Shown here: in pieces, positions 1 through 62,175 of the stretch
How positions within the stretch are numbered: position 1 is the first letter of the stretch
Layout of the letters: each line of letters begins with the position of its first letter
From: Podarcis pityusensis
Lineage: Eukaryota
Reading direction: 5' to 3' (one strand)
NCBI GenBank assembly: GCA_964106645.2
Contig: OZ067041.1
Length of the DNA stretch: 64,000 bases
Notes under the pieces: generated by a model
Told to the model about the DNA's origin: nothing
Databases searched by the model: none
The model's input: the letters and a program-made list of their open reading frames with translations, nothing else
Program-made: the position numbers and the translations under genes

Positions 1-2775
1 TAAAAGTTTAGGAATATCCTGATATCAGGCAAACTAGCAAGGAGATAAATTAGTGGCACATTGTGAGCCAAACAGCTTTCAGAAAATATTTAAATATAAT
101 TCTGTTTAAATTATTGTTTGGTTACCTCTTTAAATTTTTTTCTAGTTTCATAATCTTTAATTCTGCAATGCCTAAGTGTAAAACTATTTAAACCACTTTT
201 TTCCAGGAAGTACATGTAACTTCTTAAACCAAAGAGCCTTCTATTCTCTTGTCTCCCATGCAAAATGTTTCTAATTGCTTGTTTGGGGTTTTGTACCTGT
301 ATAAAATATGCTTTGATAGATTTGTTTTGATTAAAGTCATTTTAAGGAAGGATGTTTTTCCTACTTAGCAAACAAACTGGGAGAAATACTATGTAAGTGA
401 TGTCATACTTTAAAATACTGCATGCTCAATGTATCAGTTGTTCCTATGTGGATTTTCGTAGCATATTACAGATTGCCGATATACAGATACACAAAATTAT
501 CATCTTCCATTCTAAAATGGCAATTATTTAATTTTGAAGTAGATTGTATTTATTTTAGTAGTTGCCAGAAGCGCATATAAGCCATTATTCAACATCCATG
601 TAGATTACTTGTTTGTGTCAATAGCACAACATTTCACACTCGTGTAAAAGGTAAGGAGAGGCCCACCTTGCATTGGAGGCTTGCCCTGCTACTGTTTCTC
701 CATTTTAAAACCTTGACAAGTTGTACACTCCTGTTCAGGAGTCGTGCAGTTGATTCAGTGCACAGTCTCCAAACCTTTTGTTTTAGAAGGATAAGTAATA
801 CTTACAAAATGGCCTGGATTTTTTTAAAAAAAACAAAAAACCCTGTGTTGGCATCACAAGTCACATTACAAACTGTACTGAATAGGTGTCCATGACACTT
901 CCATACCGCAGTCCTCATAACAATCAAAGAAGCAATGAATATGCTAGTGGGGAACCCACATTTTCCCACACATAAATCCTACTCAGTGATACAAAGCATG
1001 ACAATGTTGAGGGGATGTTGCCCTTCAAAACACTTAACATGGTTATAGACTATACCAAGATGGCTTTAATTCAGGAGGCGGTGAAATAGCTTCAACCTCT
1101 AATACTAACCCTCAGCATAAGATGATTTTTAAAGGATAGTTTGTATACAGTAGAATCTTATTTCTCTAAATGCATTCTACAAATGATTGAGCACATATCT
1201 GTAGTCAAGCACTGAAAACAAGTTATTATTTTTCTAGAACTCTCAGGATGTATTTGAGACTTTGATAATCACTTTGAATTTTAAGAATTCTTTTTTTAGA
1301 TGCTGCCTTGGTCAAAGCTCTCCTGCTCCTACAAAATAAAATAAAAAAAGAGAAGATAACTTTACATTCATTTACATTAAAACAATACAATTGGAGGTTT
1401 TTGATCCATAGAAGTAAAATTAGATCTTTTATTGTGTTTCTTTTCATTTTGCTTTTTCCTAGCCATTCTTTTTAGTAGTCTATCCTCACTTTGATTTTTC
1501 ATTAAAAAATTCAACTTCTAGCATCTATAAAAAGCTCAATTTTCAAAATTTCAAAACACAAGTTCTTGAAATGCATGTTTAAGTTCTTTCGAGAAGCTTT
1601 GCATTTTTAAAAAAAACACCTGAAAATTTGTGAAAACCTGAAATATAGGCTTTGGGTTGGAACCATAGGTATGCCATCAGTCGATGGAAAGCGTCTTCCA
1701 TGCATGGAAGGGCTGTTTCTGACTTAGCAGGAAAGCATTGTGTAAGAAAATAATCCCCAGATCCAGAGGAGTTTCTCCATGTGTACAAGTTTTTTTGTAG
1801 GACTTTGCACAAGCTTATTATGATCTACTAGAATTTTTTATGCTACAGCTGGTATTTTAGTTATGCCCAGTTTCTTATACTGTAATGCAATCTCTGACAC
1901 ATTGTGCCTCTAGCTCTTGAGCAAAACTCAACATGGAACAGAACTAACAAATATTCTCCTCCTAGTTGCTGTAAGATAGGCTAATAGAATTCAAACGTGT
2001 TGTTGAAATTTCATCCCCAAAAATATTTGCTTAGAGTATCTTTCTCTAGAATGGTTCAGGCCTAATGGCAAACCATGGGTTGGCATTATGTGAACATAGT
2101 GATTCACTACTTCCCTTCTGGTTTGAGGTCAACCTTAATTTGCCATAGCATTTGAATTAACAAACTGTGGTTTGAGCATGCCCTACAAACCAGTATTATA
2201 TTGCATCCCTTAACTTTGAGATAGGGTAAAATTTCTAACCTCAGGCTCCTCATCCATTAAGTGACATTCCCCCTTAATACTGAAAGGTAGAACACACCTT
2301 TTAGTTCATGAGGCTTTGCTTGAGAGGCTTGTTCCTAAAAGGTCCATGTGTCCTTCTTCTGCAAGTAGCAAAAGTAATTATCTGAAAATGAGACAATATA
2401 TACAGAGGAAGGAAATTTAGCCAGAGAATAGCAATGCATATGAAAACCTGGCATGAAGTGAAAATTCCATGGATAAATGGAAATTTGATTTCATTATTTA
2501 TAGCAGAACATTGGGAATTGTGCAGAAGTCAAATCCATGTTTCCTCCATTGGGTTCTGCAAGTTGCTTTGTAATTTCAGGTGTTCAGAACTGTAGCTATG
2601 TTAGGAACACCTTGCTTTTTAAACTGAGTTGAAATTTTGAGTTGGCCTTTGGTAAGACAACTGGGATACAAAGGCATAAAGCATAACAAATCAATGGAAC
2701 ATTATAAACAAATTGTATGGTTGGCTACAGGAGAATGTACAGTGGTCAAGGCTAATATTCCAGCATCATCTAGAG

Positions 2776-5976: not shown

Positions 5977-6045
5977 AGAGATTCCCCCTCTACATCCAGA
6001 CAGTCCCCAGCTAATGGCCATAGCAGCATTAACAATTCTGTTTCG
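5977..6045 (+). CDS. CASK: CASK 69-nt cassette exon (PDZ-SH3 linker), [23 protein letters not shown]
   Basis: Boundaries tttcag|AGA...TCG|gtaaga, phase 0-0; peptide matches the known CASK alternatively spliced linker exon. Confidence 0.95.
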
Positions 6046-7319
6046 GTAAGACTTCTAGACAGAGAGTATTCAGATCTTGTTGGTGCTCATCTACCATTCC
6101 TGTTATGATTACATGTTCAGTAGAAAATTGTGTTCTGCTGATAAAATCAAGAATACTTAGAAGTCTAATTCCCCATTTGCTCTCATTCAAGGGTTTACAC
6201 GACAACATAATCTTCTCATTAAAATCCCTTTAATGAGTTACATTCAACTGTAATGTAAAAATTCACTCATCCCTGAAATATGCTTATCATTACCCTCATC
6301 CTGACTTGCTCAAAACTAAACAAAAAGGCTAATTTCTATTTTCAACTTTTGAAGTGGTCTTTTGAAGCAAAATATTTGCACAGCAGGTATTTGGAGGGTT
6401 TTGGTTTTTTTAGACCTGGACATTTTTTATTTTTAAAGCTCTGTAGATTGCAGTATTGGTTTCCGCTATCTCAGTTAAGGAATTGGTGTGTCCTCTGCTG
6501 TTGTGGTATGTGCACATATTTTTGTGAAATATGAGCCTTGCCTGGATATGAAAAGCAAAAGGAACTGGCTTTAAACTGCATTTATAATCCCAAGCTATTA
6601 ACATCACATCTTTAACACAAAGTACTTTCTTTTTAGTCATATGTTCAGGAAAAAAAGGTACTGTTAAACATAATGGCAGACACCGCTATTTTTTATCATT
6701 TGTTTTTCTCTGAACATATATGGTAAAACACTAGAAAGCACCTGTAGACAGATCTTCCTTGAGAAACACTTAGATAATTGTGCTGTTAACACATGTACTA
6801 TAAGATGAGAAATGGTATCTGTTTCTGCGAACTTTCAATTAACGTCAATATAGACTGTTCTATATGTTGTTTAAAATACTGCCATTGTAATTAGCTACAG
6901 GAATAATTTGGTTTATGTATAAACACTAAGATTTATATGAATTAGAAATCTATTTAGACGTAACGGCTGGATACACAGTAGCTTTCAAATTGTAAAAACA
7001 GTTTATTTATATAATTGCCCCAATAGGAATATAATTAGAATGTTAAGACTAAAAGAGGGGTCCTCCTTTGCTTACAGGTGCTTTTGTGTTGAAGATGATG
7101 TATTCTTATTGAAAGCACATTTTCTGTCTGCTTAATTTTTACCTGCTTTCTTCAGCTTGCTGCTAAACAGCCTGGATTTGACATTTTTTCCTATTAAATT
7201 GTTGTTTCTGAAAATAAATTTGTTGTTAATACTTGCAAATTAACTATTTGCTTTGATACTGTTGACTGCTTTCAAAGTAAAATGAAGTTTTCTTTTCCTG
7301 GGTTGGCTTTGTTCTGCAG

Positions 7320-7355
7320 GACTTGCCATCAACAACACAACCAAAAGGACGACAG
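7320..7355 (+). CDS. CASK: CASK 36-nt cassette exon, DLPSTTQPKGRQ
   Basis: Boundaries ctgcag|GAC...CAG|gtgaat, phase 0-0; matches vertebrate CASK peptide. Confidence 0.95.
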
Positions 7356-12718: not shown

Positions 12719-13702
12719 ACTTAATCAAGTGTGTATCCTGCCTTCTGTGTGTGGTTTCTAATTAATTAATTAAACTTACGCCCTAGTCTTCCTCTGAGGA
12801 GCTCAGGGCAACTTATATATGGTTCTTAGTCAGCACCCCACCAAGGCAGCTTCCAAGATCATACTTGTTAGACTTCAGTAGAAGAAATGCATCATATAAT
12901 CTTAGGCCATTATCTGGGTTTGTAACACATCAGCATAGCCAAATGATTGTCATAGCAGCCATGAAGTTCCTGCTAAAGGCTTGATAATAGCAAACCTGAA
13001 GACCAGGTCTGTAATTAGGAAGTCTCTAAGATAAAATCTCAGTCTCAGTCTTATCCTATATGTGGACATAGTCTGTACTGGTTATCTACTAAAAGGAAGG
13101 CTACCACTGTAGAGATCAGAGATGTACTCCGTACCCAAATTGTGGCTGATGTTGCACTAAATGACCAGGTGGAACAAACTGGACCACTATGGATTAAGCA
13201 GCAGTCCATCCTGCTTTTGGCAATGCGAATGAAATCAAGGCCTTCCTTCGTGTTTAGACTATGAAGGTCATGTAATTTAAGTTTGGTTTACAGATCACCC
13301 TGCTCTTGGAGGATTGTGTTCATGAGAGTTGCCCCAGGAGCTCCCTCCTGTCATCAGTCATGACAGTCGGTAGCCATGGCAGGATGAGAGGCTTTGAGAA
13401 ACTGGAGTACCTTCTGCCATGCCCTGTGCTGTGACAGATGAAAAGAGCCACAGCTGTCAAAGTGCTGCTTCGCCCCTGCCTTAGCTCCTCTCACCAGCTG
13501 CAGCTATCTTTTAAAGCAGCAATAACTCATTTGACTCCATGGTGGCTGCTGGTGTGGTAAACAAGGAACTGGTGCTTTGAAAAGGGTCATCAAAAATTCA
13601 AATGTGAAAGCTGGGAAATGAATTTTAATCTGTCCTGCAAAAAAAAAAAAAAATGGTGGGGGAGATTATGTTAAAGATAAATATTAACATTGCTTCATTT
13701 AA

Positions 13703-22327: not shown

Positions 22328-22648
<321 letters not shown>

Positions 22649-23903
22649 TAAATTAACACATTTGATATGTTAATGAGCTTTTCTTCATATATGAACTTGA
22701 TTTTTAAATTGTTGGTATATATGAAAAACATATGACATTTTCCCACAAAATGAATCGGAGCTAACTATGTATCCTTTTTCTGAACATTTTTGTCTCTTGC
22801 AAAAAGAAATATGAAACAAAAAGTCCATCTGCAGTGTGTTTTACATCCCAGGTGGGCCACAAAAGTTTGTGAAAATATTTTCCAAGGCTGCCCCTAATTA
22901 TTTAGGCAATCAGGCCAGTACACTGTCTTGTTAGTGGGGTGTAACCACCTCAGCAACAAGGATGTTCCATACCCATTTAGAATGTGGGTTGACACATAGC
23001 CAAACCTTATTGTCTGTGAAATCATTGCCTTTGCAACATGATCCCTGATCAGCTGGGATCATTCAGGGAAGAGAACCTGGGGAATATAAAATGCCGCTGA
23101 ATCAGCAGTAGAGGGATAAACAAGCTGTGAACAGCAGTGGGAAAGGATGCAGCTAAGGGGCTTGTGGGGGAACATTTCCTCTCTAAATATTAAAATTTGG
23201 CGGGGCTCCTGAAAAGACTTCATACATAGCCCAAAGGGTTTCTTGCTATTTTTCAAGCACTAGTAAGAACAGTTGCGGACGGAAACAGTATTTTAAACTG
23301 CAGGTTGTCTTATGAACAATAGGAATTGTGCAGATGGGTTCTCTCATTTGTATAAATTGCAATGATATCAGCTTGAGTACTGGTTTGCAAAATCTTCAAC
23401 ATCAAACATCAAATACCTACAACTGTTGCGACCTGGTAGTCAGCAGCAGTTACACATACCTGCTATTCCTGGTTACCTAGTAGCAAATGAAAGCCCCTTC
23501 ACCTAGTTCTCTGCACATCACAAAGAAATCAAAGGTGGTAAAGATCTCTTCCCCTCTTGCTGTCACTCCTAAGTTCTCTAGCCTACTTCCAAGTGTCACC
23601 AATGCCTGATACGAACAGAAAGTCAGAGGACAGGTGGGGGTCAGTGGGAACCACAAATAGTGTCTGCCTGCCAAGCCCAGATAAAATTGGGGGCCCTTGT
23701 ATTATATTTAATTTATTTTTTACATTCAGTAGTACCATTGACAGAAACGAGTTCTAACAATGCATAGACATTTCGGGCGCTGCAAGGTTGGAAACACTTA
23801 TCAACTTACAATTTGGCTTCCAAAAGGATCCAGAATCATGTTTTGTCTTCAAATGTATTACAATGTATGCCATGCTCCTCCTCCTAAAATATTCTTTCCT
23901 TAG

Positions 23904-23987
23904 GCCCTGAAGGTCCTGAGGACTGCAGAGTTTGCTCCTTTTGTTGTTTTTATCGCTGCACCTACAATTACCCCAGGCATTAACGAG
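23904..23987 (+). CDS. CASK: CASK GK domain exon [28 protein letters not shown]
   Basis: Boundaries ccttag|GCC...GAG|gtaaga, 84 nt, phase 0-0. Confidence 0.97.
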
Positions 23988-24901
23988 GTAAGACTTTTGC
24001 AATGAAATCACATTTGTAGAGTACTTAAGAATAGGCACAAACAGAAACTTCATCCCTATTTGACGGAATTTAATGTGATAGATAATAGTGATGAATGAAA
24101 TCTTGATGAAGAAATCTTATATTCATTATTGTTTCTCTGTACTGTAATGGAAGTTTAAGACTACGTCCATTCATTCATTTTCCTTTCAAATCATCATTTG
24201 CATAAATATCCCTTTTTCTTTACCTGCTTTACCTTGTTTTAAAACCTACCTTAAAAGCACATATTTCTAAGGACATGTCTGTACCACTCATTTCTGCACA
24301 GTCGTTCACTGAAAATGCATGAGAGGATGATGGAAGTCTGCCTCTCTGTTTTATGTCACTGATTGTCCCTAAATAGAAGTTCACATCAAGTTTCTTTACA
24401 CACAGCTAGAGAATAACCTTTTTAAATATATAGATTTAGTTTGGACAATGTCTTGTGATGTGAAGACATTATCAGAGCTTCTTTTCCTTTTAATCTTTAA
24501 AACAATTTTTAGCATACTTACATTTATTGGGAAAGTAGGAGTTTGTTTTTTACTTTGTCCAAGCCCAGCTGCTTAAAACTTCCATATAGATCTATTTTAT
24601 TCATTTCATTTTGTATCAAGTGTCAATGGTGTCTAGGTGTAATTGTATATATTTTGGTATTGCGTTTTATAAAAAGCAAAATGCTGAACTCATGATTCCA
24701 AGATGGAGCAAGCACCTGTTCACTGAAATTGTATGACAGAACTGACAAAAGGAGACAGAAATTGAAATGAAAATAAGTGTAAGATGTGGTGATGTCACAG
24801 ACATATCCTCCTACATGACTGCCCTTGTTTTGTTTATTTTTCTTGAATTATCATTTTTACTTTTCTTCTCATTTTCTTGCACTTGTACTAATTTTATCTA
24901 G

Positions 24902-24928
24902 CTGCCAAAATGGTGCAGAAAGTTGCCT
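24902..24928 (+). CDS. CASK: Candidate CASK 27-nt microexon, LPKWCRKLP
   Basis: Long pyrimidine tract then atctag|CTG CCA AAA TGG TGC AGA AAG TTG CCT|gtaagt; phase 0-0 like the host intron; no stop. Confidence 0.6.
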
Positions 24929-25161
24929 GTAAGTACCAGCTTAGGAACCAATAATATATAATCCTTATTATTTTAAGTTGCACAGTGGAAAGGTGCCAGA
25001 CATGGACAGGAGCAGGAATTGCATTTCAGTAATGATGTCACAGACCAGTGAATGCACAGGTTACAATCCATGCAGGAGGAGGAGTAGTAACAGTGTATGA
25101 AGTAACAGTGTATGAAGGAAATATTTCATTTTCCCAAATATAAAATTATAGTACTTCTATT

Positions 25162-25678
25162 CAGTGCTTCTTTTCTAGAAAAAAAGGGTGACAGTTTTTA
25201 CCATGATTCTCTTCCTCCCTTTTCTCTCTCTCTCTCTCACACACACTCCTGTCCCTCCCCCCATTAATTAAAGGCCCCTCTCCCTCAACCTTGTCCCTTC
25301 TGCTCTTCACACCTACCCAACAGCCTGCCCCCCCCTTCTCCTTCCTTCCCCTCCTCCCAGCCACCAGCCACACCGTCCGCACTCACCTCTATGGCTTGCC
25401 CCAGCCCCAGAATGGAGGGCGATGGAGCCTTGTCCGCCTTCTCTCCCTCCCACCCCGTACACATGCAAAGAGCGAGCAGAGATGAAAGGGAAGTGGTACT
25501 CACTCGCTCAGCCGCTTGCAGCACTGCAAGGCAGCAGCATAGGAGCATGTCCAGGGCAGAAGAGGGGGAATGATGCAACCTGTTGACTGAGAGCAGCAAC
25601 TCCAGCCCCAAACAAGGACCTCCTTTTCCTCACTGCCACTGCCTCAGCCTCCTGCTTTTTGCAATCCCCCTTTTAGCC

Positions 25679-25715
<37 letters not shown>

Positions 25716-25803
25716 CTCCCCACCCTCCATATACCTTATCGCAAGATTGGTGGGGGGGTGCCAGTACTGCATACTGCTGAGTACTGCCAGAAAAAAAGCA
25801 CTG
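25162..25803. mobile_element. Non-autonomous DNA transposon (hAT-like) with internal (TTGC)n and CT-rich repeats
   Basis: TIRs CAGTGCTTCTTTTCT / AGAAAAAAAGCACTG; degenerate 8-bp flanks. Confidence 0.65.
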
Positions 25804-25904
25804 CCTCTGCTGATAGGAAAATGTTATATCCCTGAAGCCAAAATGCAGCTTCTTGGTAGATACTTAGACTAATGAGGAACAACTGCACTTTCTTTGCCTT
25901 ACAC

Positions 25905-26040
25905 CAGGCATCCCCAACCTTCAGCCCTCCAGATGTTTGGGACTACAATTCCCATCATCCCTGACCACTGGTCCTGTTAGCTAGGGATCATGGGAGTTGT
26001 AGGCCAAAACATCTGGAGGGCCGCAGGTTGAAGGTGCCTG
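25905..26040. mobile_element. Short palindromic hAT-type MITE
   Basis: TIRs CAGGCATCCCCAACCT / AGGTTGAAGGTGCCTG; perfect 8-bp TSD CCTTACAC. Confidence 0.9.
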
Positions 26041-27317
26041 CCTTACACCATGATCATTTTAAGGCCCATAGTATCACCAGGGTGTGGCTATAACATGCCT
26101 GGCTTCTGAATCCATTGGCTCTGAATCTTAGTACTTTTCTGCTTCACTTCCCTTTCCTGATACGTGCCTGTTCAGGAGGAGTGTGGTACAAATGGAAATG
26201 ACAAGCGCTCAGAGTAAAGCCTCACACAATTTTCTCAGAATGTGTGTTGTTCTGTGAATGTTTCCCGTGGTGGCAATTTCATATAGGCCAAAGTAATGAA
26301 GAGGGAGCAATATATCTGTGGATTAGTTGATACCGCAGGTCTCATGTTGCTAATGCACAATACCCAAACTAGAAGCTCTTTGTGTGCGTAGGCTGCTCCT
26401 ATTGGAGGGAGCAGAGTTGTCCCTGTGAAGGCAACACCAGCATTTATAGGTTTAGAGCACATGTGGGATACATACGGCTCTCTGGTTGTTGGTCATGCTG
26501 GCTGGAGTTGATGGGAGTTGAAAATCCAACATCTGAAAGACCACAGGTTCCCCACACTTTTAAAGGGTTTGCAAAAGTGTGCACATCAGAAAAACTTAAT
26601 ATGATCCTGTAATGGTTTCCCAACTTCCCTGTTCTCTAATACACTTTAGTAGTTCATGTGTACCAGAGAGCATACAATGTATTCCTTTTAGTCAACACCA
26701 TCTACCAATTCGTTGTGAATAAAGGAACTTCCAGTTTGTGTGAATTAAGCGATTTCACAAGGGCCGCCCCATTCATTTAAATAAGGGGGCGACTAACATG
26801 GGGCCCTCCAGACATTTCAGGACTACAGCTCCCATCATCCCTGACCCTTGGCCATGCTAGCTGTGACTGATGGGAGTTGGAATCCAATAACATCTGCAAG
26901 GCCACAGGTTAGCTCCACCCCCACCCACCCCCAATTTAGAAAGAGACAACAGAATCATGCTCATGTTCCTTTATGCGTGCAGATCTGCTTCTTTCACTGA
27001 AATGAATTAGATTGCTCATGTGCCTTAATCAAATCAATGCATAACAGAAGACAAATAGGTTGTATGTGGTGTGTTGTCCTTAATGACATAGCCCTCCACA
27101 CCCCTTGGTCCTTGTTTATGCTGATCCTTTTTTCTCATCTTCATTCCTTGTCCATTCAAGTCTCCCTGAAAGTAGATAAGTGTATGGTTGTGTTGTGAGA
27201 AACCTAAGACTGTGGCAAACTGTATAACAAATTAAGTGGAATTTGGCGTTTATTAAGGTACTAAATCACTGACAAATTCTTAGGTAAGAATTTCATTTGG
27301 TAGTCTCTTCTGTATAA

Positions 27318-27569
<252 letters not shown>

Positions 27570-29030
27570 TCTTATCACCGGAAGAATTTTATCATTACTG
27601 GGAACCACCTCATACATGGAAGAACCTCTTTGTTATTGACCTTGTGTCAACAGGTCTTGGCCCCTAGAGACTACCTAGATGTAGTGTGACCTAAATTTAT
27701 AATTATCGTCATGTCCTTATAGATAGGAGGAGAAAATGCTAATTTAAAGAGACAGTATCTTTTTTAATCAGTTCTCCTAAACTTTATTAAAATGTATCTT
27801 TAAATATATGTATTATTCAATCCTTTGGAATGTTATATTTTTGGAAATCATAGCTTTTAATTTCAAAGGCCCCTAAAACTGCACAAAATAGATGCTGCTT
27901 TCTATAATCTATTTTAATAATAATATGATCTGTTACTTAACTTGGGGTTGGAACACTACATTCTTTTTAGAGTCTGATTTTGTGAATTGGAATACCTTGC
28001 TTTCCTTTATTTATTTGAAATTATTAGCCCAATCATAACAAGATCAATTCTTAAATTCTAATGGCCTTCCTTTGCTTTTTTATTTTTAGAATAGTATTTT
28101 GAAGTACTTTCATGTAATATCCGAATAATGTGATACTGTCTCTTTGAAGAACTCTGTAAAACTTATAGAGATTTGAAGTTGGGTCTTGACTCTTAATGCA
28201 TGTGGGCAGTCGCAAGCGTTCATGCTGTTGGTGTATCTGTGTTGAAAAAAAACTGTAATCTACAGCAAAGTACATTCCGTTCATGGGGGGAAGTACCCAA
28301 GGGAATAAAATTAAGTACTATGACTAAGTTGTAAAACCTATGCACATCCCTTGCATTTTGGGCAACTTTATAAACAAAAATCCTAATTTTTATTAATAAT
28401 CATGTAGTGAAATGTGTTTGTAATTTTGTCTCAATTTAATTTGTTGTAAAGGTGGGAGGGGGAAAAAATTACTGGTTTCACCATTTCAGATCTGTGTTGT
28501 CTGAGAGTATTAACGTTTTAATTACGTTTAAGCAAAGAAATGCTGATTTTTAATATGTATGTAATTGTTTTGAAAATGCACACATTTTAAGAGAAAATAC
28601 TGTGCAATGAAGAAACCAGTTTAGGCATTGCGATGAACTAACAATTCCAAAAGACTCATCTGCCGCAGCCCTGTAAATTCCTTTCAACGGTAAATGACTC
28701 TACATTCTGACCAATTTTTTATTTTAAATATACTTCCTTTTATGTGTTCAACAATTAAATGCCTTGGGTCATTCATTTCATCACAGGATTCTTCAGGTGC
28801 TTCAAAAGCCAGTCAACTCCTTTGTAGATGTTTAGGGTGGGGAGGGATTCTCGCCATCTTTGTGTTGATTGGCATACGTGGTTTGACTGCAAGACTTGAA
28901 GACTTGTGGCTCACTTAGCAAATAAGGGTTGCTTCATACAGTCACATTTTTAGCATGTGCGCATATTATACATGCTAAAAACAATATACCGAAAAAAATA
29001 TGCGTAATAAAACAAACATGTAGTGCACAG
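27570..29030 (+). other. CASK: CASK 3'UTR, proximal part (may extend to ~34600)
   Basis: AU-rich stretch with no recognisable repeats after the stop; AATAAA at 28304-28309 and 29006-29011. Confidence 0.6.
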
Positions 29031-32000
29031 GTACAAATCTCCGGGAGCTTCCAATTGGCCACGTCCTCCTGCAGTGCATACTGAATGGGGAAGCGTTTGT
29101 TCTTGACAATGTGTGAAGCAGTCCTAAATTTTATATGCAGAGCCTTAATAAGCAAATATTTTCCATGTATTCATCTCAGGGTTGTTGCTATTTTCTGATT
29201 TATCTGACCTTCCTTCAGCAAAGGGTAACGTCTGTTCCCTGTCCTAGAAGAGGGAGACTGAGCATTTCCCATCCCAGTTTGATGTCTTTGTGAACTTAAA
29301 TCACCATTTATCGCCAGTATTGATGTACCTTGGACTGATTGTTTTACATTTTTATTATTTAATATGGATTTTTTGCTTTTGTTATTAAATTCCAGTATGT
29401 TTTTGAAAAGTGTTATCCTCAACGTTAAAATGCAAAAAAAAATTATTTACTCATAGATAGCTTCACCTCCTTGAGAACCATTCAGAATTCAACATATGTT
29501 AACAATATAAAAAGACTAAAGATTTTTAAAGGGCCTAAGAAGAGTTAATGTACTTTGAGAAGACTGCAAGCGAGAGCAAAGAGAGCCATTTCCTTTGGCA
29601 TATAAGCCTTTGCACTAGGTTTTTTATGTATAGAGGGTGATACCCAACATTAGTCCTCCTCAGAGTATACCCATTGAAATCAATGAGTTGAATCCAGCTC
29701 TGCACACAGAGTTCCACTTGTGCAACAGGATTTCTCCTACCTCACTTTTCCTCACATGTCCCAAAGAACTACTCTGCAAACCTTTTATAGCAGATTTTGA
29801 GGGTATGCAGGTGAGAAGACCCATTGCACAACCCAATAAACTTAAATACATTGATCTCAGTGGACAACCATAATTTAGCTGGATAGCACCCAGAACGTTT
29901 ATCAGTTGCCTTTGTCTCATTGCATAGCCCATGACACCTTCAGAAATTCGGATTGCAAGCTAGTTTTGAGTTTCTGAACCTGGCACAATGTAAGTTTAAT
30001 GAGAAAAAGATATCCCTTTTTCTATCCCCTCCCCGAGCTTTGATTATTCAACTATAAACATAACCATTTAATTTGCATTTGTTATTAGACTACATGGTTT
30101 TCCTGACTTTATGACATCATGCCTTGCATCACAGGGCTGGCAAAAAATTGAAGCAATATACAGCTGTTTCTTTACCATCAACATTATTCTTAAGGAATTG
30201 AGTGTACTATTATAATCCAGTGCTGTGGAAATGGAATCACTGAGCTGATTCAATAAGCTTTTAATCTCCCAGCATTCTAACATCTGCATTAGTGACTTAT
30301 TCTCTCTGGATTTTTTCTGCTCTTATGTGTTAAACTTTTTATTCTTTAGCTAAATATTCAGCAGCAAATTATGGGGATTTAGTAGCCAGTGCCACTATCA
30401 AAAACATTTGTGCTAGTAGCATATTTATTAGCAGTATCTGTGTACACTTGTGATGCAAGTTCATCTTCCATGACAACAGCAAAACCCTAGTTCATTTTAA
30501 TGCAGCTAAGTAGCACCCATGGTTTGTAGTATTGTGCTTCTCAGTTGAAATTCCTGCATTGCAGGGGATTGGACTGGATGGCCTTCAGGATCCCTTCTGA
30601 CTGCAATTCTATGATTCTGTGATCACCAGGATTGCACCCTTGGTGGGTGGCTCCTGCACTGCCAACACCCATTAACAATGCCACCACCTCCCACCCCATC
30701 CAAAATGGTGGAGTCCCCCATCTTGATTCAAAATAGCAGCCAACCTTTTCCAAACAAAGACCAAAATCTGCACCTCCATCTTAAGAACCGCCATGTCAAA
30801 TTGGAATAGCAGAATCATCAGAGACATCCCCATTGACCCAGTTTGTTGCACCAAATTGAGCAACAATCTCTTGTGACATCTCCAGATAGGCAGAGTTTGG
30901 AATGGTTCAGTCTGCTGTTTGGATTCCAAACATTGTCCAATGGTATCCAAGCAGACCAAAACCTGCTCTTCGCTCTTGGGAACCAACACACCAAATTAAG
31001 CAACAGTATTTTCAGAGGTGTCAGAATTGGTACAGCTTGGAACCATCACACCAAACCGGGCGACACAACACCATACTGAGCAACAGCACCTTCAGAAGCA
31101 TCGAAATGCAGAACTCTGCATCCAAAACAGCGTTACTAGGAAGAAGGATTGGCTGCTATACCACTGTGAGCATTGTAGCTCGGGGGGGGTAATAAGGGTC
31201 TTCTAATAACTCATCACCTTAACAAACTACAGTTCCCAGGATTCTTCACGTGGAAGTCGTGACTGCTTAAAGAGGTATGATGCCACTTTAAATATATTGT
31301 GCAGATGATGTCTCCAGAGTGAAAACCAGGAGTGCGTTTTTCTGTGAACTTGAGCAGGTGCTTGGAAGCATCCTGCTCCTCAGTTTGAAGAATATGCTGT
31401 TCTCCCCACCGCGGCCACTCATTTGCACCTGGCTCCATTTGGTAAATTTCAGAGTTCTGGGTTTTTTGTTTGTTTGTTTTTTAAAGGTAGAAAATGCAAG
31501 CCTGAAACCTGCCCACCCTGATTTACTGGATGTGCCTATGCTGCCATGTTTTTGAGAAACAAAAGACACCACAGGACAACTTCCATGGTACTGAACAGTA
31601 GCCTCCCATGACTACTCTGGAAACAGCCCTGGAGGTCAGAATGGAACCACTAAAGTATGGTGCCCCCACACTACCCCTTCTTAAAAATAATATTAGGGAA
31701 CAATGAAGGAGCCTCTCTGTATGCATCTATCCAAAAGGCATTATAAACAGAGGCTTTGTTTTCTGTTGGAATAAGAAACCTTACCATTATTAATATTTAA
31801 ATGATATTGAAATGGGTCTCGAGGAAAAAAGAAAGCATCTGTCCAGAGAATTAGCACTTCTATGAAGAAATTAGCATGGTGAGTTACCGCATTGTTTTGT
31901 AATATTCTGATATCTACTAGCTTTCATTTTAATTGGCATTCTGAAATGGGGGTAAATCAACACATAGATGTTACTTTGGGTGAATCCAAGGGGGGGGGGA

Positions 32001-62043: not shown

Positions 62044-62175
62044 CTCTGTCATCACGTCCAGATCCTCCTCTGGATCCAAACACACCACGATCACGATCGT
62101 AGCCATTCATCCGGCTGTCACGATCATATCCATTCATATAGCCATTACCTCCACGAGAGTCCCAGCTGGGGGAAT
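62044..62175 (-). CDS. DDX3X: DDX3X additional 132-nt exon, DSPSWDSRGGNGYMNGYDRDSRMNGYDRDRGVFGSRGGSGRDDR (An3/PL10-like)
   Basis: Boundaries ctctgccaaag|AT...AGA G|gtgggc, phase 1-1, open frame; resembles the Xenopus An3 N-terminal insert (WDS-RGGNGY-NG...RMNGYDR). Confidence 0.85.

What the first reader, a model, noticed from the sequence alone, without database searches (positions are those of the whole stretch)
24850..24935. Candidate 27-nt microexon inserting LPKWCRKLP into the CASK guanylate-kinase domain
Seen in sequence: inside the last CASK intron (phase 0), a ~50-nt pyrimidine-rich tract containing TGC (24878-24880) and TACTAAT (24886-24892) leads to TAG|CTGCCAAAATGGTGCAGAAAGTTGCCT|GTAAGT. 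The exon is 27 nt, frame-preserving and stop-free, with a consensus donor. Inclusion gives ...TPGINE-LPKWCRKLP-DESLQRL... Established: neural microexons are 3-27 nt, usually frame-preserving, and activated by SRRM4/SRRM3 through an upstream UGC; ACUAAY is also a QKI site; canonical human CASK lacks this peptide. Inference: a tissue-regulated basic, Cys/Trp-containing insert in the LID region of the GK domain, which could alter GK partner binding (e.g. TBR1, CINAP) or SH3-GK coupling. It may be present in non-mammalian vertebrates and lost in mammals.
Basis: partly seen in the sequence, partly recalled or inferred. Interest (0 to 1): 0.78.

Follow-up and report, generated by a model that had tools for sequence, protein, structure and literature searches.

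The report
Known photoreceptor CASK microexon in lizard
The 27-base candidate is a real exon: it is this reptile's copy of a tiny CASK exon kept almost unchanged from skates and bony fish to mammals, which in mouse is used almost only in rod photoreceptors under Musashi-1 control, so it is a known exon and not a new brain microexon lost in mammals.

Summary
The sequence is exactly as described: AG|27 nt|GTAAGT at 24902-24928, phase 0, encoding LPKWCRKLP between ...TPGINE and DESLQRL... of the CASK guanylate-kinase (GK) domain.

Splice-site strength alone does not separate it from chance pseudo-exons. Conservation does. The same 27-nt exon, with AG and GT(A/G)AGT sites, lies in the last CASK intron of another sauropsid, red deer, bank vole, little skate and both teleost CASK paralogues. 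It is the only conserved block in that intron. Changes are almost all synonymous (pN 0-0.09, pS 0.2-1.0). GenBank models of notothenioid fish already splice it in.

It is a known exon. ASCOT (Ling et al. 2020) lists a 27-nt mouse Cask exon with PSI 96.7 in rods, 12.4 in cochlear hair cells and about 0 in brain and all other neurons. Msi1 knock-down abolishes it. Its spacing from exon E24a (7015 nt) matches the vole (7000 nt).

"Lost in mammals" is refuted, and "pan-neural SRRM4 microexon" is not supported.

The lizard lacks the downstream UAG cluster seen in the other tetrapods and, as a cluster, in the skate.

The scan's notes hold no earlier CASK finding.

The parts
24902..24928 (+). 27-nt cassette exon encoding LPKWCRKLP, orthologue of the mouse rod-specific Cask exon
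   Evidence: sequence and translation. Orthologous exons in L009, L014, L016, L015, L001-7, L017 and L018/19. pN/pS. Mouse exon chrX:13524825-13524851 in ASCOT.
24900..24901 (+). 3' splice site AG
   Evidence: AG is invariant in all aligned species.
24929..24934 (+). 5' splice site GTAAGT
   Evidence: GTAAGTA is invariant in lizard, L009, deer, vole, skate and teleost L001-7. It is GTGAGT in L017 and L018/19.
24822..24899 (+). Upstream pyrimidine-rich tract with UCUU/UUCU/CUUC (PTBP1-type) motifs; UGC at 24878-24880 (-24); TACTAAT at 24886-24892 (probable branch point)
   Evidence: pyrimidine fraction 0.76 over 80 nt, with PTB-like motifs at -62..-27. UGC at -24 is also present in L009, deer, vole and teleost. 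TACTAAT is shared with deer and vole.
24820..24946 (+). The only block of the 3.4-kb last intron that is conserved with other vertebrates (an exon-shaped conservation peak)
   Evidence: blastn of 23988-27392 against the last introns of L009 (86% over 104 nt, E 6e-28), deer (79% over 121, E 1e-24), vole (73% over 147, E 2e-20), skate (82% over 44, E 3e-6) and teleost (82.5% over 40, E 4e-5). There were no other hits.
24942..24944 (+). Single downstream UAG (+14), conserved at +13 to +15 in L009, deer, vole and skate. The further UAG cluster present in those species is degenerate here.
23904..23987 (+). Upstream constitutive 84-bp exon ('E25' of Dembowski 2012), ending ..TPGINE.
   Evidence: The 84-bp size matches PMC3447378 Table 1.
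27393..27569 (+). Last coding exon (DESLQRL...VSWVY plus the stop codon)
   Evidence: It is 100% identical to annotated sauropsid CASK C-termini.
22383..22585 (+). 203-bp exon ('E24'). Intron 24 (22586-23903, 1318 nt) is the intron that holds the mammal-only exon E24a in mammals, and it is not the candidate's intron.

Best explanation
Window 24902-24928 is the orthologue, in this sauropsid, of an ancient 27-nt alternative exon in the last intron of CASK. The exon has been present since at least the common ancestor of jawed vertebrates. When it is included, nine residues ([L/V/I]P[K/R]WC[K/R]KLP) are inserted into the surface loop between the FVVFIAAP strand and the LQRLQKES helix of the GK domain. 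That loop stands where catalytic guanylate kinases have their LID. In mouse the exon is included almost only in rod photoreceptors and weakly in cochlear hair cells. The published control logic is repression by PTBP1 on the upstream pyrimidine tract and activation by Musashi-1 on UAG motifs just downstream of the donor. Shown here: the sequence, the orthology, the purifying selection on the peptide, the positional identity with the mouse exon, and the loop location. Inferred: that the exon is spliced in this lizard's photoreceptors by the same logic, and that the insert changes GK-domain partner binding or SH3-GK coupling at the photoreceptor synapse.
For: The same exon lies in the same intron and phase, with AG and GT(A/G)AGT sites, in L009, deer L014 and skate L015, vole L016, teleost L001-7, the other teleost paralogue L017 and icefish L018/19. 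It is the only conserved block in the intron. Among amniotes pN is 0 with pS 0.17-0.35. Lizard against teleost gives pN 0.05 and pS 0.86-1.0. Lizard against skate gives pN 0.09 and pS 0.69. GenBank proteins KAK5847817.1 (Eleginops) and KAK5875024.1 (Champsocephalus) read MTE-IPKWCKKLP-DDSLQ.., and those models use the genomic 27-nt exon. ASCOT Supplementary Data 1 lists mouse Cask chrX:13524825-13524851 (27 nt) with PSI 96.7 in rods, 12.4 in hair cells and 0 in brain and other neurons. Msi1 shRNA abolishes it. In human retinal organoids the CASK retinal exon falls 60% after MSI1 knock-down, with MSI1 motifs at the donor and PTBP1 motifs upstream. The distance from E24a to the 27-nt exon is 7015 nt in mouse and 7000 nt in vole. 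In the AlphaFold2 model of the no-insert form P0297 the junction E246|D247 lies in loop 237-247, between strand 230-236 and helix 248-267. Pfam leaves profile positions 126-137 unmatched at that point.
Against: There is no RNA evidence from this species. The UAG cluster that is conserved downstream in L009, deer and vole, and present as a cluster in skate, is degenerate in the lizard: 1 UAG in 150 nt against 5. Musashi dependence in this lineage is therefore doubtful. The function of the insert has not been tested in any species.
Confidence: 0.87

Rival explanations
1. It is a chance pseudo-exon: an AG..GTAAGT pair in an AT-rich intron that happens to be open in frame and is never spliced.
For: The splice-site scores are modest, and 43 equal-or-better AG..GT pairs exist in the 64 kb window. 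The bare pattern AG-N(3..30, multiple of 3)-GTRAGT occurs 27 and 21 times on the two strands.
Against: The exon is conserved, with synonymous-only or conservative changes, from skate and teleosts to mammals. It is the only conserved block of the intron. It is annotated in fish gene models and measured at PSI 97 in mouse rods.
Confidence: 0.01
2. One reading: a pan-neuronal microexon activated by SRRM4/SRRM3 through the upstream UGC, repressed by QKI through ACUAAY, and lost in mammals.
For: The length is 27 nt and the exon preserves the frame. A UGC at -24 is conserved in lizard, L009, deer, vole and teleost. The upstream UCU-rich tract followed by UGC resembles the bipartite enhancer described for SRRM3/4 microexons. 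Cochlear hair cells also include the exon at PSI 12. From memory, not checked here: rods and hair cells both express SRRM3/4.
Against: PSI is 0 in mouse brain and in every non-photoreceptor neuron type profiled, and inclusion is abolished by Msi1 knock-down. The exon is intact in deer and vole. The TACTAAT lies downstream of the UGC, whereas in the described SRRM architecture the UGC lies between the branch point and the AG. The CASK microexon reported as SRRM3/4-sensitive was not identified here and may be a different exon, for example the 18-nt exon listed in ASCOT's human table.
Confidence: 0.07
3. It is a relic in this lineage. The exon sequence is still intact, but the exon is no longer, or only weakly, spliced in this lizard because the downstream Musashi-type UAG enhancer cluster has decayed.
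For: There is only 1 UAG in the 150 nt downstream, against 5 in L009, deer, vole and skate. The block TAG..TAGAATGTAGACAT shared by L009, deer and vole aligns to a UAG-free stretch in the lizard.
Against: The peptide is identical to the mammalian one. The only differences from deer, vole and L009 are one or two synonymous changes. Both splice sites, the pyrimidine tract, the UGC, the TACTAAT and the +14 UAG are intact. Teleosts also lack a tight cluster (UAG at +48, +84 and +95), yet fish gene models include the exon.
Confidence: 0.1

Closest known systems
Mouse/human rod (retina)-specific 27-nt CASK exon, Msi1-dependent (Ling et al. 2020, ASCOT, PMC6952364; bioRxiv 10.1101/2021.08.04.454918)
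   Same: Same gene, same intron, same 27-nt length and phase. The peptide is identical in deer and vole (LPKWCRKLP), the donor is the same GTAAGTACCAGC, and the upstream pyrimidine tract is present. The mouse coordinates match the vole exon by spacing (7015 against 7000 nt).
   Different: Tissue use in the lizard is untested. The lizard lacks the downstream UAG cluster that the mammals and a second sauropsid share.
CASK E24a, the depolarisation-inducible 120-nt exon in the GK domain (Dembowski et al. 2012, PMC3447378)
   Same: It is also an alternative, frame-preserving insert in a loop of the CASK GK domain, and it is normally skipped.
   Different: E24a lies one intron upstream, between the 203-bp and 84-bp exons. 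It is 120 nt (40 aa), specific to mammals, and has a weak non-canonical donor. The candidate lies in the last intron, is 27 nt, has a consensus donor and is pan-gnathostome.
SRRM3/4 (eMIC)-dependent neural microexons
   Same: The size class is the same (27 nt or less), the exon preserves the frame, it lies in a surface loop of an interaction domain, and it has an upstream UCU-rich tract plus UGC.
   Different: It is not included in brain or generic neurons in mouse. The demonstrated regulator is MSI1, with PTBP1 motifs upstream, and SRRM dependence has not been shown.
Other Musashi-dependent photoreceptor-specific exons (Ttc8, Cep290, Cc2d2a, Prom1, Adgrv1, Doc2b; same ASCOT table)
   Same: They are short cassette exons with PSI above 80 in rods and about 0 elsewhere, and several are also 27 nt (Adgrv1, Doc2b, Kif1b).
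   Different: The host protein is a synaptic MAGUK scaffold, not a ciliary protein, and the insert lies in a degenerate enzyme LID loop.

Membership tests
Rod/retina-specific MSI1-dependent CASK 27-nt exon (ASCOT) | A 27-nt, phase-0 cassette exon in the last CASK intron, between the 84-bp exon and the last exon | tested here: met
Rod/retina-specific MSI1-dependent CASK 27-nt exon (ASCOT) | Sequence orthology with the mammalian exon | tested here: met
   Deer and vole have the identical peptide. The exon-plus-flank block aligns at 79% (E 1e-24) with deer and 73% (E 2e-20) with vole.
Rod/retina-specific MSI1-dependent CASK 27-nt exon (ASCOT) | The mouse exon chrX:13524825-13524851 is the exon of the last intron | tested here: met
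   Its spacing to E24a is 7015 nt in mouse and 7000 nt in vole. The mouse DNA itself was not read.
Rod/retina-specific MSI1-dependent CASK 27-nt exon (ASCOT) | Photoreceptor-restricted inclusion in this species | not testable with these tools
Rod/retina-specific MSI1-dependent CASK 27-nt exon (ASCOT) | Tandem UAG (Musashi) motifs within about 125 nt downstream of the donor | tested here: not met
   The lizard has 1 UAG in 150 nt, against 5 in L009, deer, vole and skate. This lowers the claim about the regulator in the lizard, not the orthology.
Rod/retina-specific MSI1-dependent CASK 27-nt exon (ASCOT) | PTBP1-type pyrimidine motifs upstream of the acceptor | tested here: met
   UCUU/UUCU/CUUC motifs at -62..-27, with pyrimidine fraction 0.76.
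SRRM3/4-dependent neural microexon | Length 3-27 nt, frame-preserving | tested here: met
SRRM3/4-dependent neural microexon | UGC close to the 3' splice site, downstream of a UCU-rich tract | tested here: met
   UGC at -24, conserved in amniotes and teleost. Its position relative to the branch point is ambiguous.
SRRM3/4-dependent neural microexon | Inclusion across neurons and brain | tested here: not met
   The mouse orthologue has PSI 0 in brain and in all non-photoreceptor neuron types in ASCOT Supplementary Data 1. This is published data, not data from this species.
CASK E24a | A 120-nt exon in intron 24, between the 203-bp and 84-bp exons, found only in mammals | tested here: not met
   The candidate lies in the next intron. 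In the vole, E24a is at 6120-6239 and the 27-nt exon at 13239-13265.

The most novel reading that the evidence does not exclude
In this lizard lineage the ancient photoreceptor exon has been uncoupled from Musashi. The downstream UAG cluster, kept between mammals and another sauropsid and present as a cluster in skate, has decayed. The exon, its splice sites, the UGC at -24 and the branch-point consensus remain under constraint. The exon may therefore now be driven by another factor (for example SRRM3 through the UGC) or be used in a different set of cells, which would be regulatory turnover on a 450-million-year-old coding microexon.
Probability: 0.12. Interest if true: 0.45.

Novelty: already known. 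Interest (0 to 1): 0.27.

Why it matters
The exon itself was reported in 2020 as a novel rod-specific splicing event in mouse and was later followed in human retinal organoids. The lizard copy is therefore an orthologue of a known exon. First, the exon and its peptide are under strict purifying selection across jawed vertebrates, including both teleost CASK paralogues, which argues for a real and so far unstudied function of a photoreceptor-specific CASK GK-domain isoform. Second, the insert lies in the loop that replaces the guanylate-kinase LID. Third, none of the sauropsid CASK proteins I could list carries the insert, so variant interpretation and isoform catalogues may overlook the exon. 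CASK is an X-linked disease gene whose disorders can include eye findings (my own knowledge, not checked here). An unannotated, photoreceptor-only coding exon is a plausible blind spot, but that link is speculation.

Tried and rejected
There is therefore no read evidence. In local scripts they were masked or left out.

Exons were searched one at a time, by reference.

(3) The search for homologous proteins with P0002, region 630-698, gave 2353 hits, but the 120 listed are all perfect no-insert matches. Insert-bearing isoforms would rank lower, so this is uninformative about annotation in reptiles and birds.

(4) A profile containing the insert failed. MAFFT misplaces the nine residues, because P0013 has only three residues upstream of them.

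(5) A search scoring the last exon only, in the mid-size length range, gave 42 hits, none with the insert.

(6) P0013 itself is not on record in the look-up of encoding contigs. Contigs L010-L013 were too short to reach the exon.

(7) P0003 has a human-like C-terminus and was deliberately not followed.

(8) No repeat or transposon copy of the region exists elsewhere in the window.

(9) Which CASK exon is HsaEX0012545, and which is the zebrafish caska developmental microexon, could not be established.

(10) For the deer, vole and skate loci I used database protein ids of partial CASK models.

Full report
OBSERVATION. The 84-bp exon ends at 23987 with ..TPGINE and a GAG|gtaaga donor. At 24900-24934 the window reads ag|27 nt|gtaagt, and the 27 nt (24902-24928) translate without a stop to LPKWCRKLP. 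The last exon starts at 27393 with DESLQRL and ends ..VSWVY, with the stop at 27567-27569. The intron is phase 0, so inclusion preserves the frame. TGC at 24878-24880 and TACTAAT at 24886-24892 are correct, and the 50 nt upstream are 78% pyrimidine. Pfam puts both flanking exons in the C-terminal part of Guanylate_kin PF00625. The upstream exon matches profile positions 105-125 and the last exon positions 138-180. The junction therefore falls in a gap of the profile.

IS IT MORE THAN CHANCE? Not on splice signals alone. The real neighbouring sites score 11.2 and 10.4. In this 64 kb, 26 AG..GT pairs on the + strand and 17 on the - strand, 3-51 nt apart, score at least as well on both sites. One of them is a real CASK alternative exon (7320-7355), and most of the rest look like noise. 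A reader scanning 64 kb would expect to meet a few such 'microexons' by chance. The region is not repeated elsewhere in the window.

READS. The look-up of sequencing runs found RNA-type contig runs of the same species label that hold about 45% of the sampled words of 23800-30400, which is about the share expected for exons plus UTR. It also found two raw bulk RNA-seq runs. I therefore have no direct RNA evidence from this species. Exons were searched separately, by reference.

CONSERVATION. A search of 1.84 billion representative proteins with the last exon alone returned P0013, among many genomic read-through ORFs. P0013 is 70 aa and reads MTE-IPKWCKKLP-DDSLQRL... It is GenBank KAK5847817.1 of the notothenioid Eleginops maclovinus. 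A cluster-mate, KAK5875024.1 of Champsocephalus, has the same insert. These are fish CASK models with a 9-residue insert, 7/9 identical to the lizard peptide, at exactly this junction. I then fetched genomic DNA around last-exon ORFs and partial CASK models, and the exon itself turned up in every lineage examined:
- teleost contigs L001-L007 (VPKWCRKLP, about 750 nt upstream of the last exon);
- a distant sauropsid, L009 (LPKWCRKLP);
- red deer, L014 (LPKWCRKLP), and little skate, L015 (LPRWCKKLP);
- bank vole, L016 (LPKWCRKLP);
- the other teleost paralogue, of caska type, L017 (LPRWCRKLP);
- icefish, L018/L019 (IPKWCKKLP), where the annotated model uses 9 nt of the 84-bp exon, then the 27-nt exon, then the last exon.

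In every case the exon is 27 nt long, follows an AG and precedes GTAAGT or GTGAGT. When the whole lizard intron (23988-27392) is compared with each of five orthologous introns, the single significant match is the exon with its immediate flanks (window 24820-24946; E from 6e-28 to 4e-5). The substitutions are those of a translated sequence. Among amniotes pN is 0 while pS is 0.17-0.35. Lizard against teleost gives pN 0.05 and pS 0.86-1.0. Lizard against skate gives pN 0.09 and pS 0.69. The chance pseudo-exon reading is excluded. The exon is at least as old as jawed vertebrates, and it has not been lost in mammals.

WHAT IT IS. The literature identifies it. ASCOT (Ling et al. 2020, PMC6952364) lists, in Supplementary Data 1, mouse Cask chrX:13524825-13524851, which is 27 nt. 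Its PSI is 96.7 in P28 rod photoreceptors, 12.4 in cochlear hair cells, 0.5 in embryonic motor neurons and 0.16 in islets. It is 0 in brain, in all other tissues and in about 20 other neuronal and glial populations. [quoted passage not shown] A preprint on human retinal organoids (10.1101/2021.08.04.454918) reports a 60% drop of the CASK retinal exon after MSI1 knock-down. It also reports MSI1 motifs next to the donor and PTBP1 motifs upstream of the acceptor, and notes that some of these exons are still unannotated. I could not read mouse DNA, so I tied the coordinates to the exon by spacing. The same table lists the 120-nt exon E24a at chrX:13531866-13531985, which is 7015 nt from the 27-nt exon. 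In the vole, E24a (6120-6239) is 7000 nt from the LPKWCRKLP exon (13239-13265), with the 84-bp exon between them. The lizard candidate is thus the orthologue of a known rod- and retina-specific, Musashi-dependent CASK exon.

It is not E24a (Dembowski et al. 2012, PMC3447378). E24a lies one intron upstream, between the 203-bp exon (window 22383-22585) and the 84-bp exon, and is found only in mammals. It is also distinct from the 18-nt CASK exon listed in ASCOT's human table. A clone survey of human brain CASK found variation only at exons 11, 19, 20 and 23L (PMC8208546), which fits a PSI of about 0 in brain.

HOW IT LIKELY WORKS. For the protein, I made an AlphaFold2 model of a no-insert sauropsid fragment (P0297; GK-domain pLDDT mostly 74-91). 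The junction E246|D247 falls in loop 237-247, between strand 230-236 (FVVFIAA) and helix 248-267 (SLQRLQKES..), and confidence is lower in that loop. Together with the unmatched Pfam positions 126-137, this places the nine basic, Trp/Cys-containing residues in the shortened loop that replaces the LID of true guanylate kinases. Calling it the LID rests on general knowledge of the fold. What the insert does, whether to partner binding, to SH3-GK coupling or to something else at the photoreceptor synapse, is unknown, and I offer it only as inference.

For the RNA, the lizard keeps the upstream pyrimidine tract with UCUU/UUCU/CUUC motifs, a UGC at -24 (also in L009, deer, vole and teleost) and TACTAAT at -16..-10 (also in deer and vole). 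The TACTAAT is most simply a branch-point consensus unusually close to the AG. The lizard also keeps a UAG at +14, conserved at +13 to +15 in the other tetrapods and the skate. This fits the published logic of PTBP1 repression and MSI1 activation. The conserved UGC leaves room for help from SRRM3/4. From memory, not checked here, SRRM3 is needed for photoreceptor microexons.

AN ODDITY. L009, deer and vole share a block about 50-60 nt downstream of the donor with three closely spaced UAGs, and the skate also has five UAGs in 150 nt. In the lizard this block aligns to a UAG-free stretch, and only the +14 UAG remains. Either Musashi control is weaker or different in this lineage, or the proximal site is enough. 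Teleosts also lack a tight cluster, yet their gene models include the exon. This is the main reason my confidence that the lizard uses the exon in the mammalian way is lower than my confidence in the orthology.

VERDICT. Novelty: already known. The exon was reported in mouse in 2020 and followed in human retinal organoids, and it is annotated in some fish. The depth of conservation, its presence in both teleost paralogues, the loop location and the decay of the UAG cluster in the lizard are modest additions. The scan's own notes contained nothing on CASK.

Noticed in passing
window 24945-25080, compared with L009:6850-6870, L014:6580-6625 and L016:13283-13330: The cluster of UAG (Musashi-type) motifs downstream of the exon is shared by a second sauropsid, deer and vole, and is present as a cluster in skate. 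In this lizard it is degenerate: 1 UAG in 150 nt against 5.
   Followed up: partly
window 7320-7355 and about 6000-6045: The pseudo-exon scan also picked up the real 36-nt CASK alternative exon (DLPSTTQPKGRQ) and the 3' part of the preceding alternative exon (..[13 protein letters not shown]). Both peptides are present in annotated sauropsid CASK (P0002).
   Followed up: partly
window 22586-23903: Intron 24 is only 1318 nt here. In the vole it is about 7.3 kb and carries the mammal-only exon E24a, and a 2012 paper gives 2878 nt for 'lizard'. The short intron is consistent with the absence of E24a outside mammals, but I did not search it for an E24a-like sequence.
   Followed up: no
P0314, P0315, P0318, P0173, P0313 (invertebrate-type CASK fragments): At the same point of the GK domain these proteins have longer and variable linkers before the DESLQ/ERL helix (for example ..APTIIGNDNTRNLPMPNGDVA). 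The loop that receives the vertebrate microexon is therefore a general hot spot for length variation.
   Followed up: no
L017:9385-9411 and L018:3198-3224: Both teleost CASK paralogues keep the 27-nt exon. In L017 and in the icefish the donor is GTGAGT, not GTAAGT, and in L017 the last intron is only about 850 nt.
   Followed up: partly
PMC12626420 supplement; bioRxiv 10.1101/2024.09.17.613571: Zebrafish caska has a microexon whose PSI rises from 0 to 0.75 across the five samples of that table row. Human CASK has a highly SRRM3/4-sensitive microexon, HsaEX0012545. I could not establish which exons these are. The 18-nt exon in ASCOT's human table is a likely candidate for the human one.
   Followed up: partly
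window 62044-62175: Another first-stage note on this window proposes an extra 44-codon RG/NGY-rich DDX3X exon. DDX3X lying downstream of CASK fits the expected gene order (from memory). I did not examine it.
   Followed up: no
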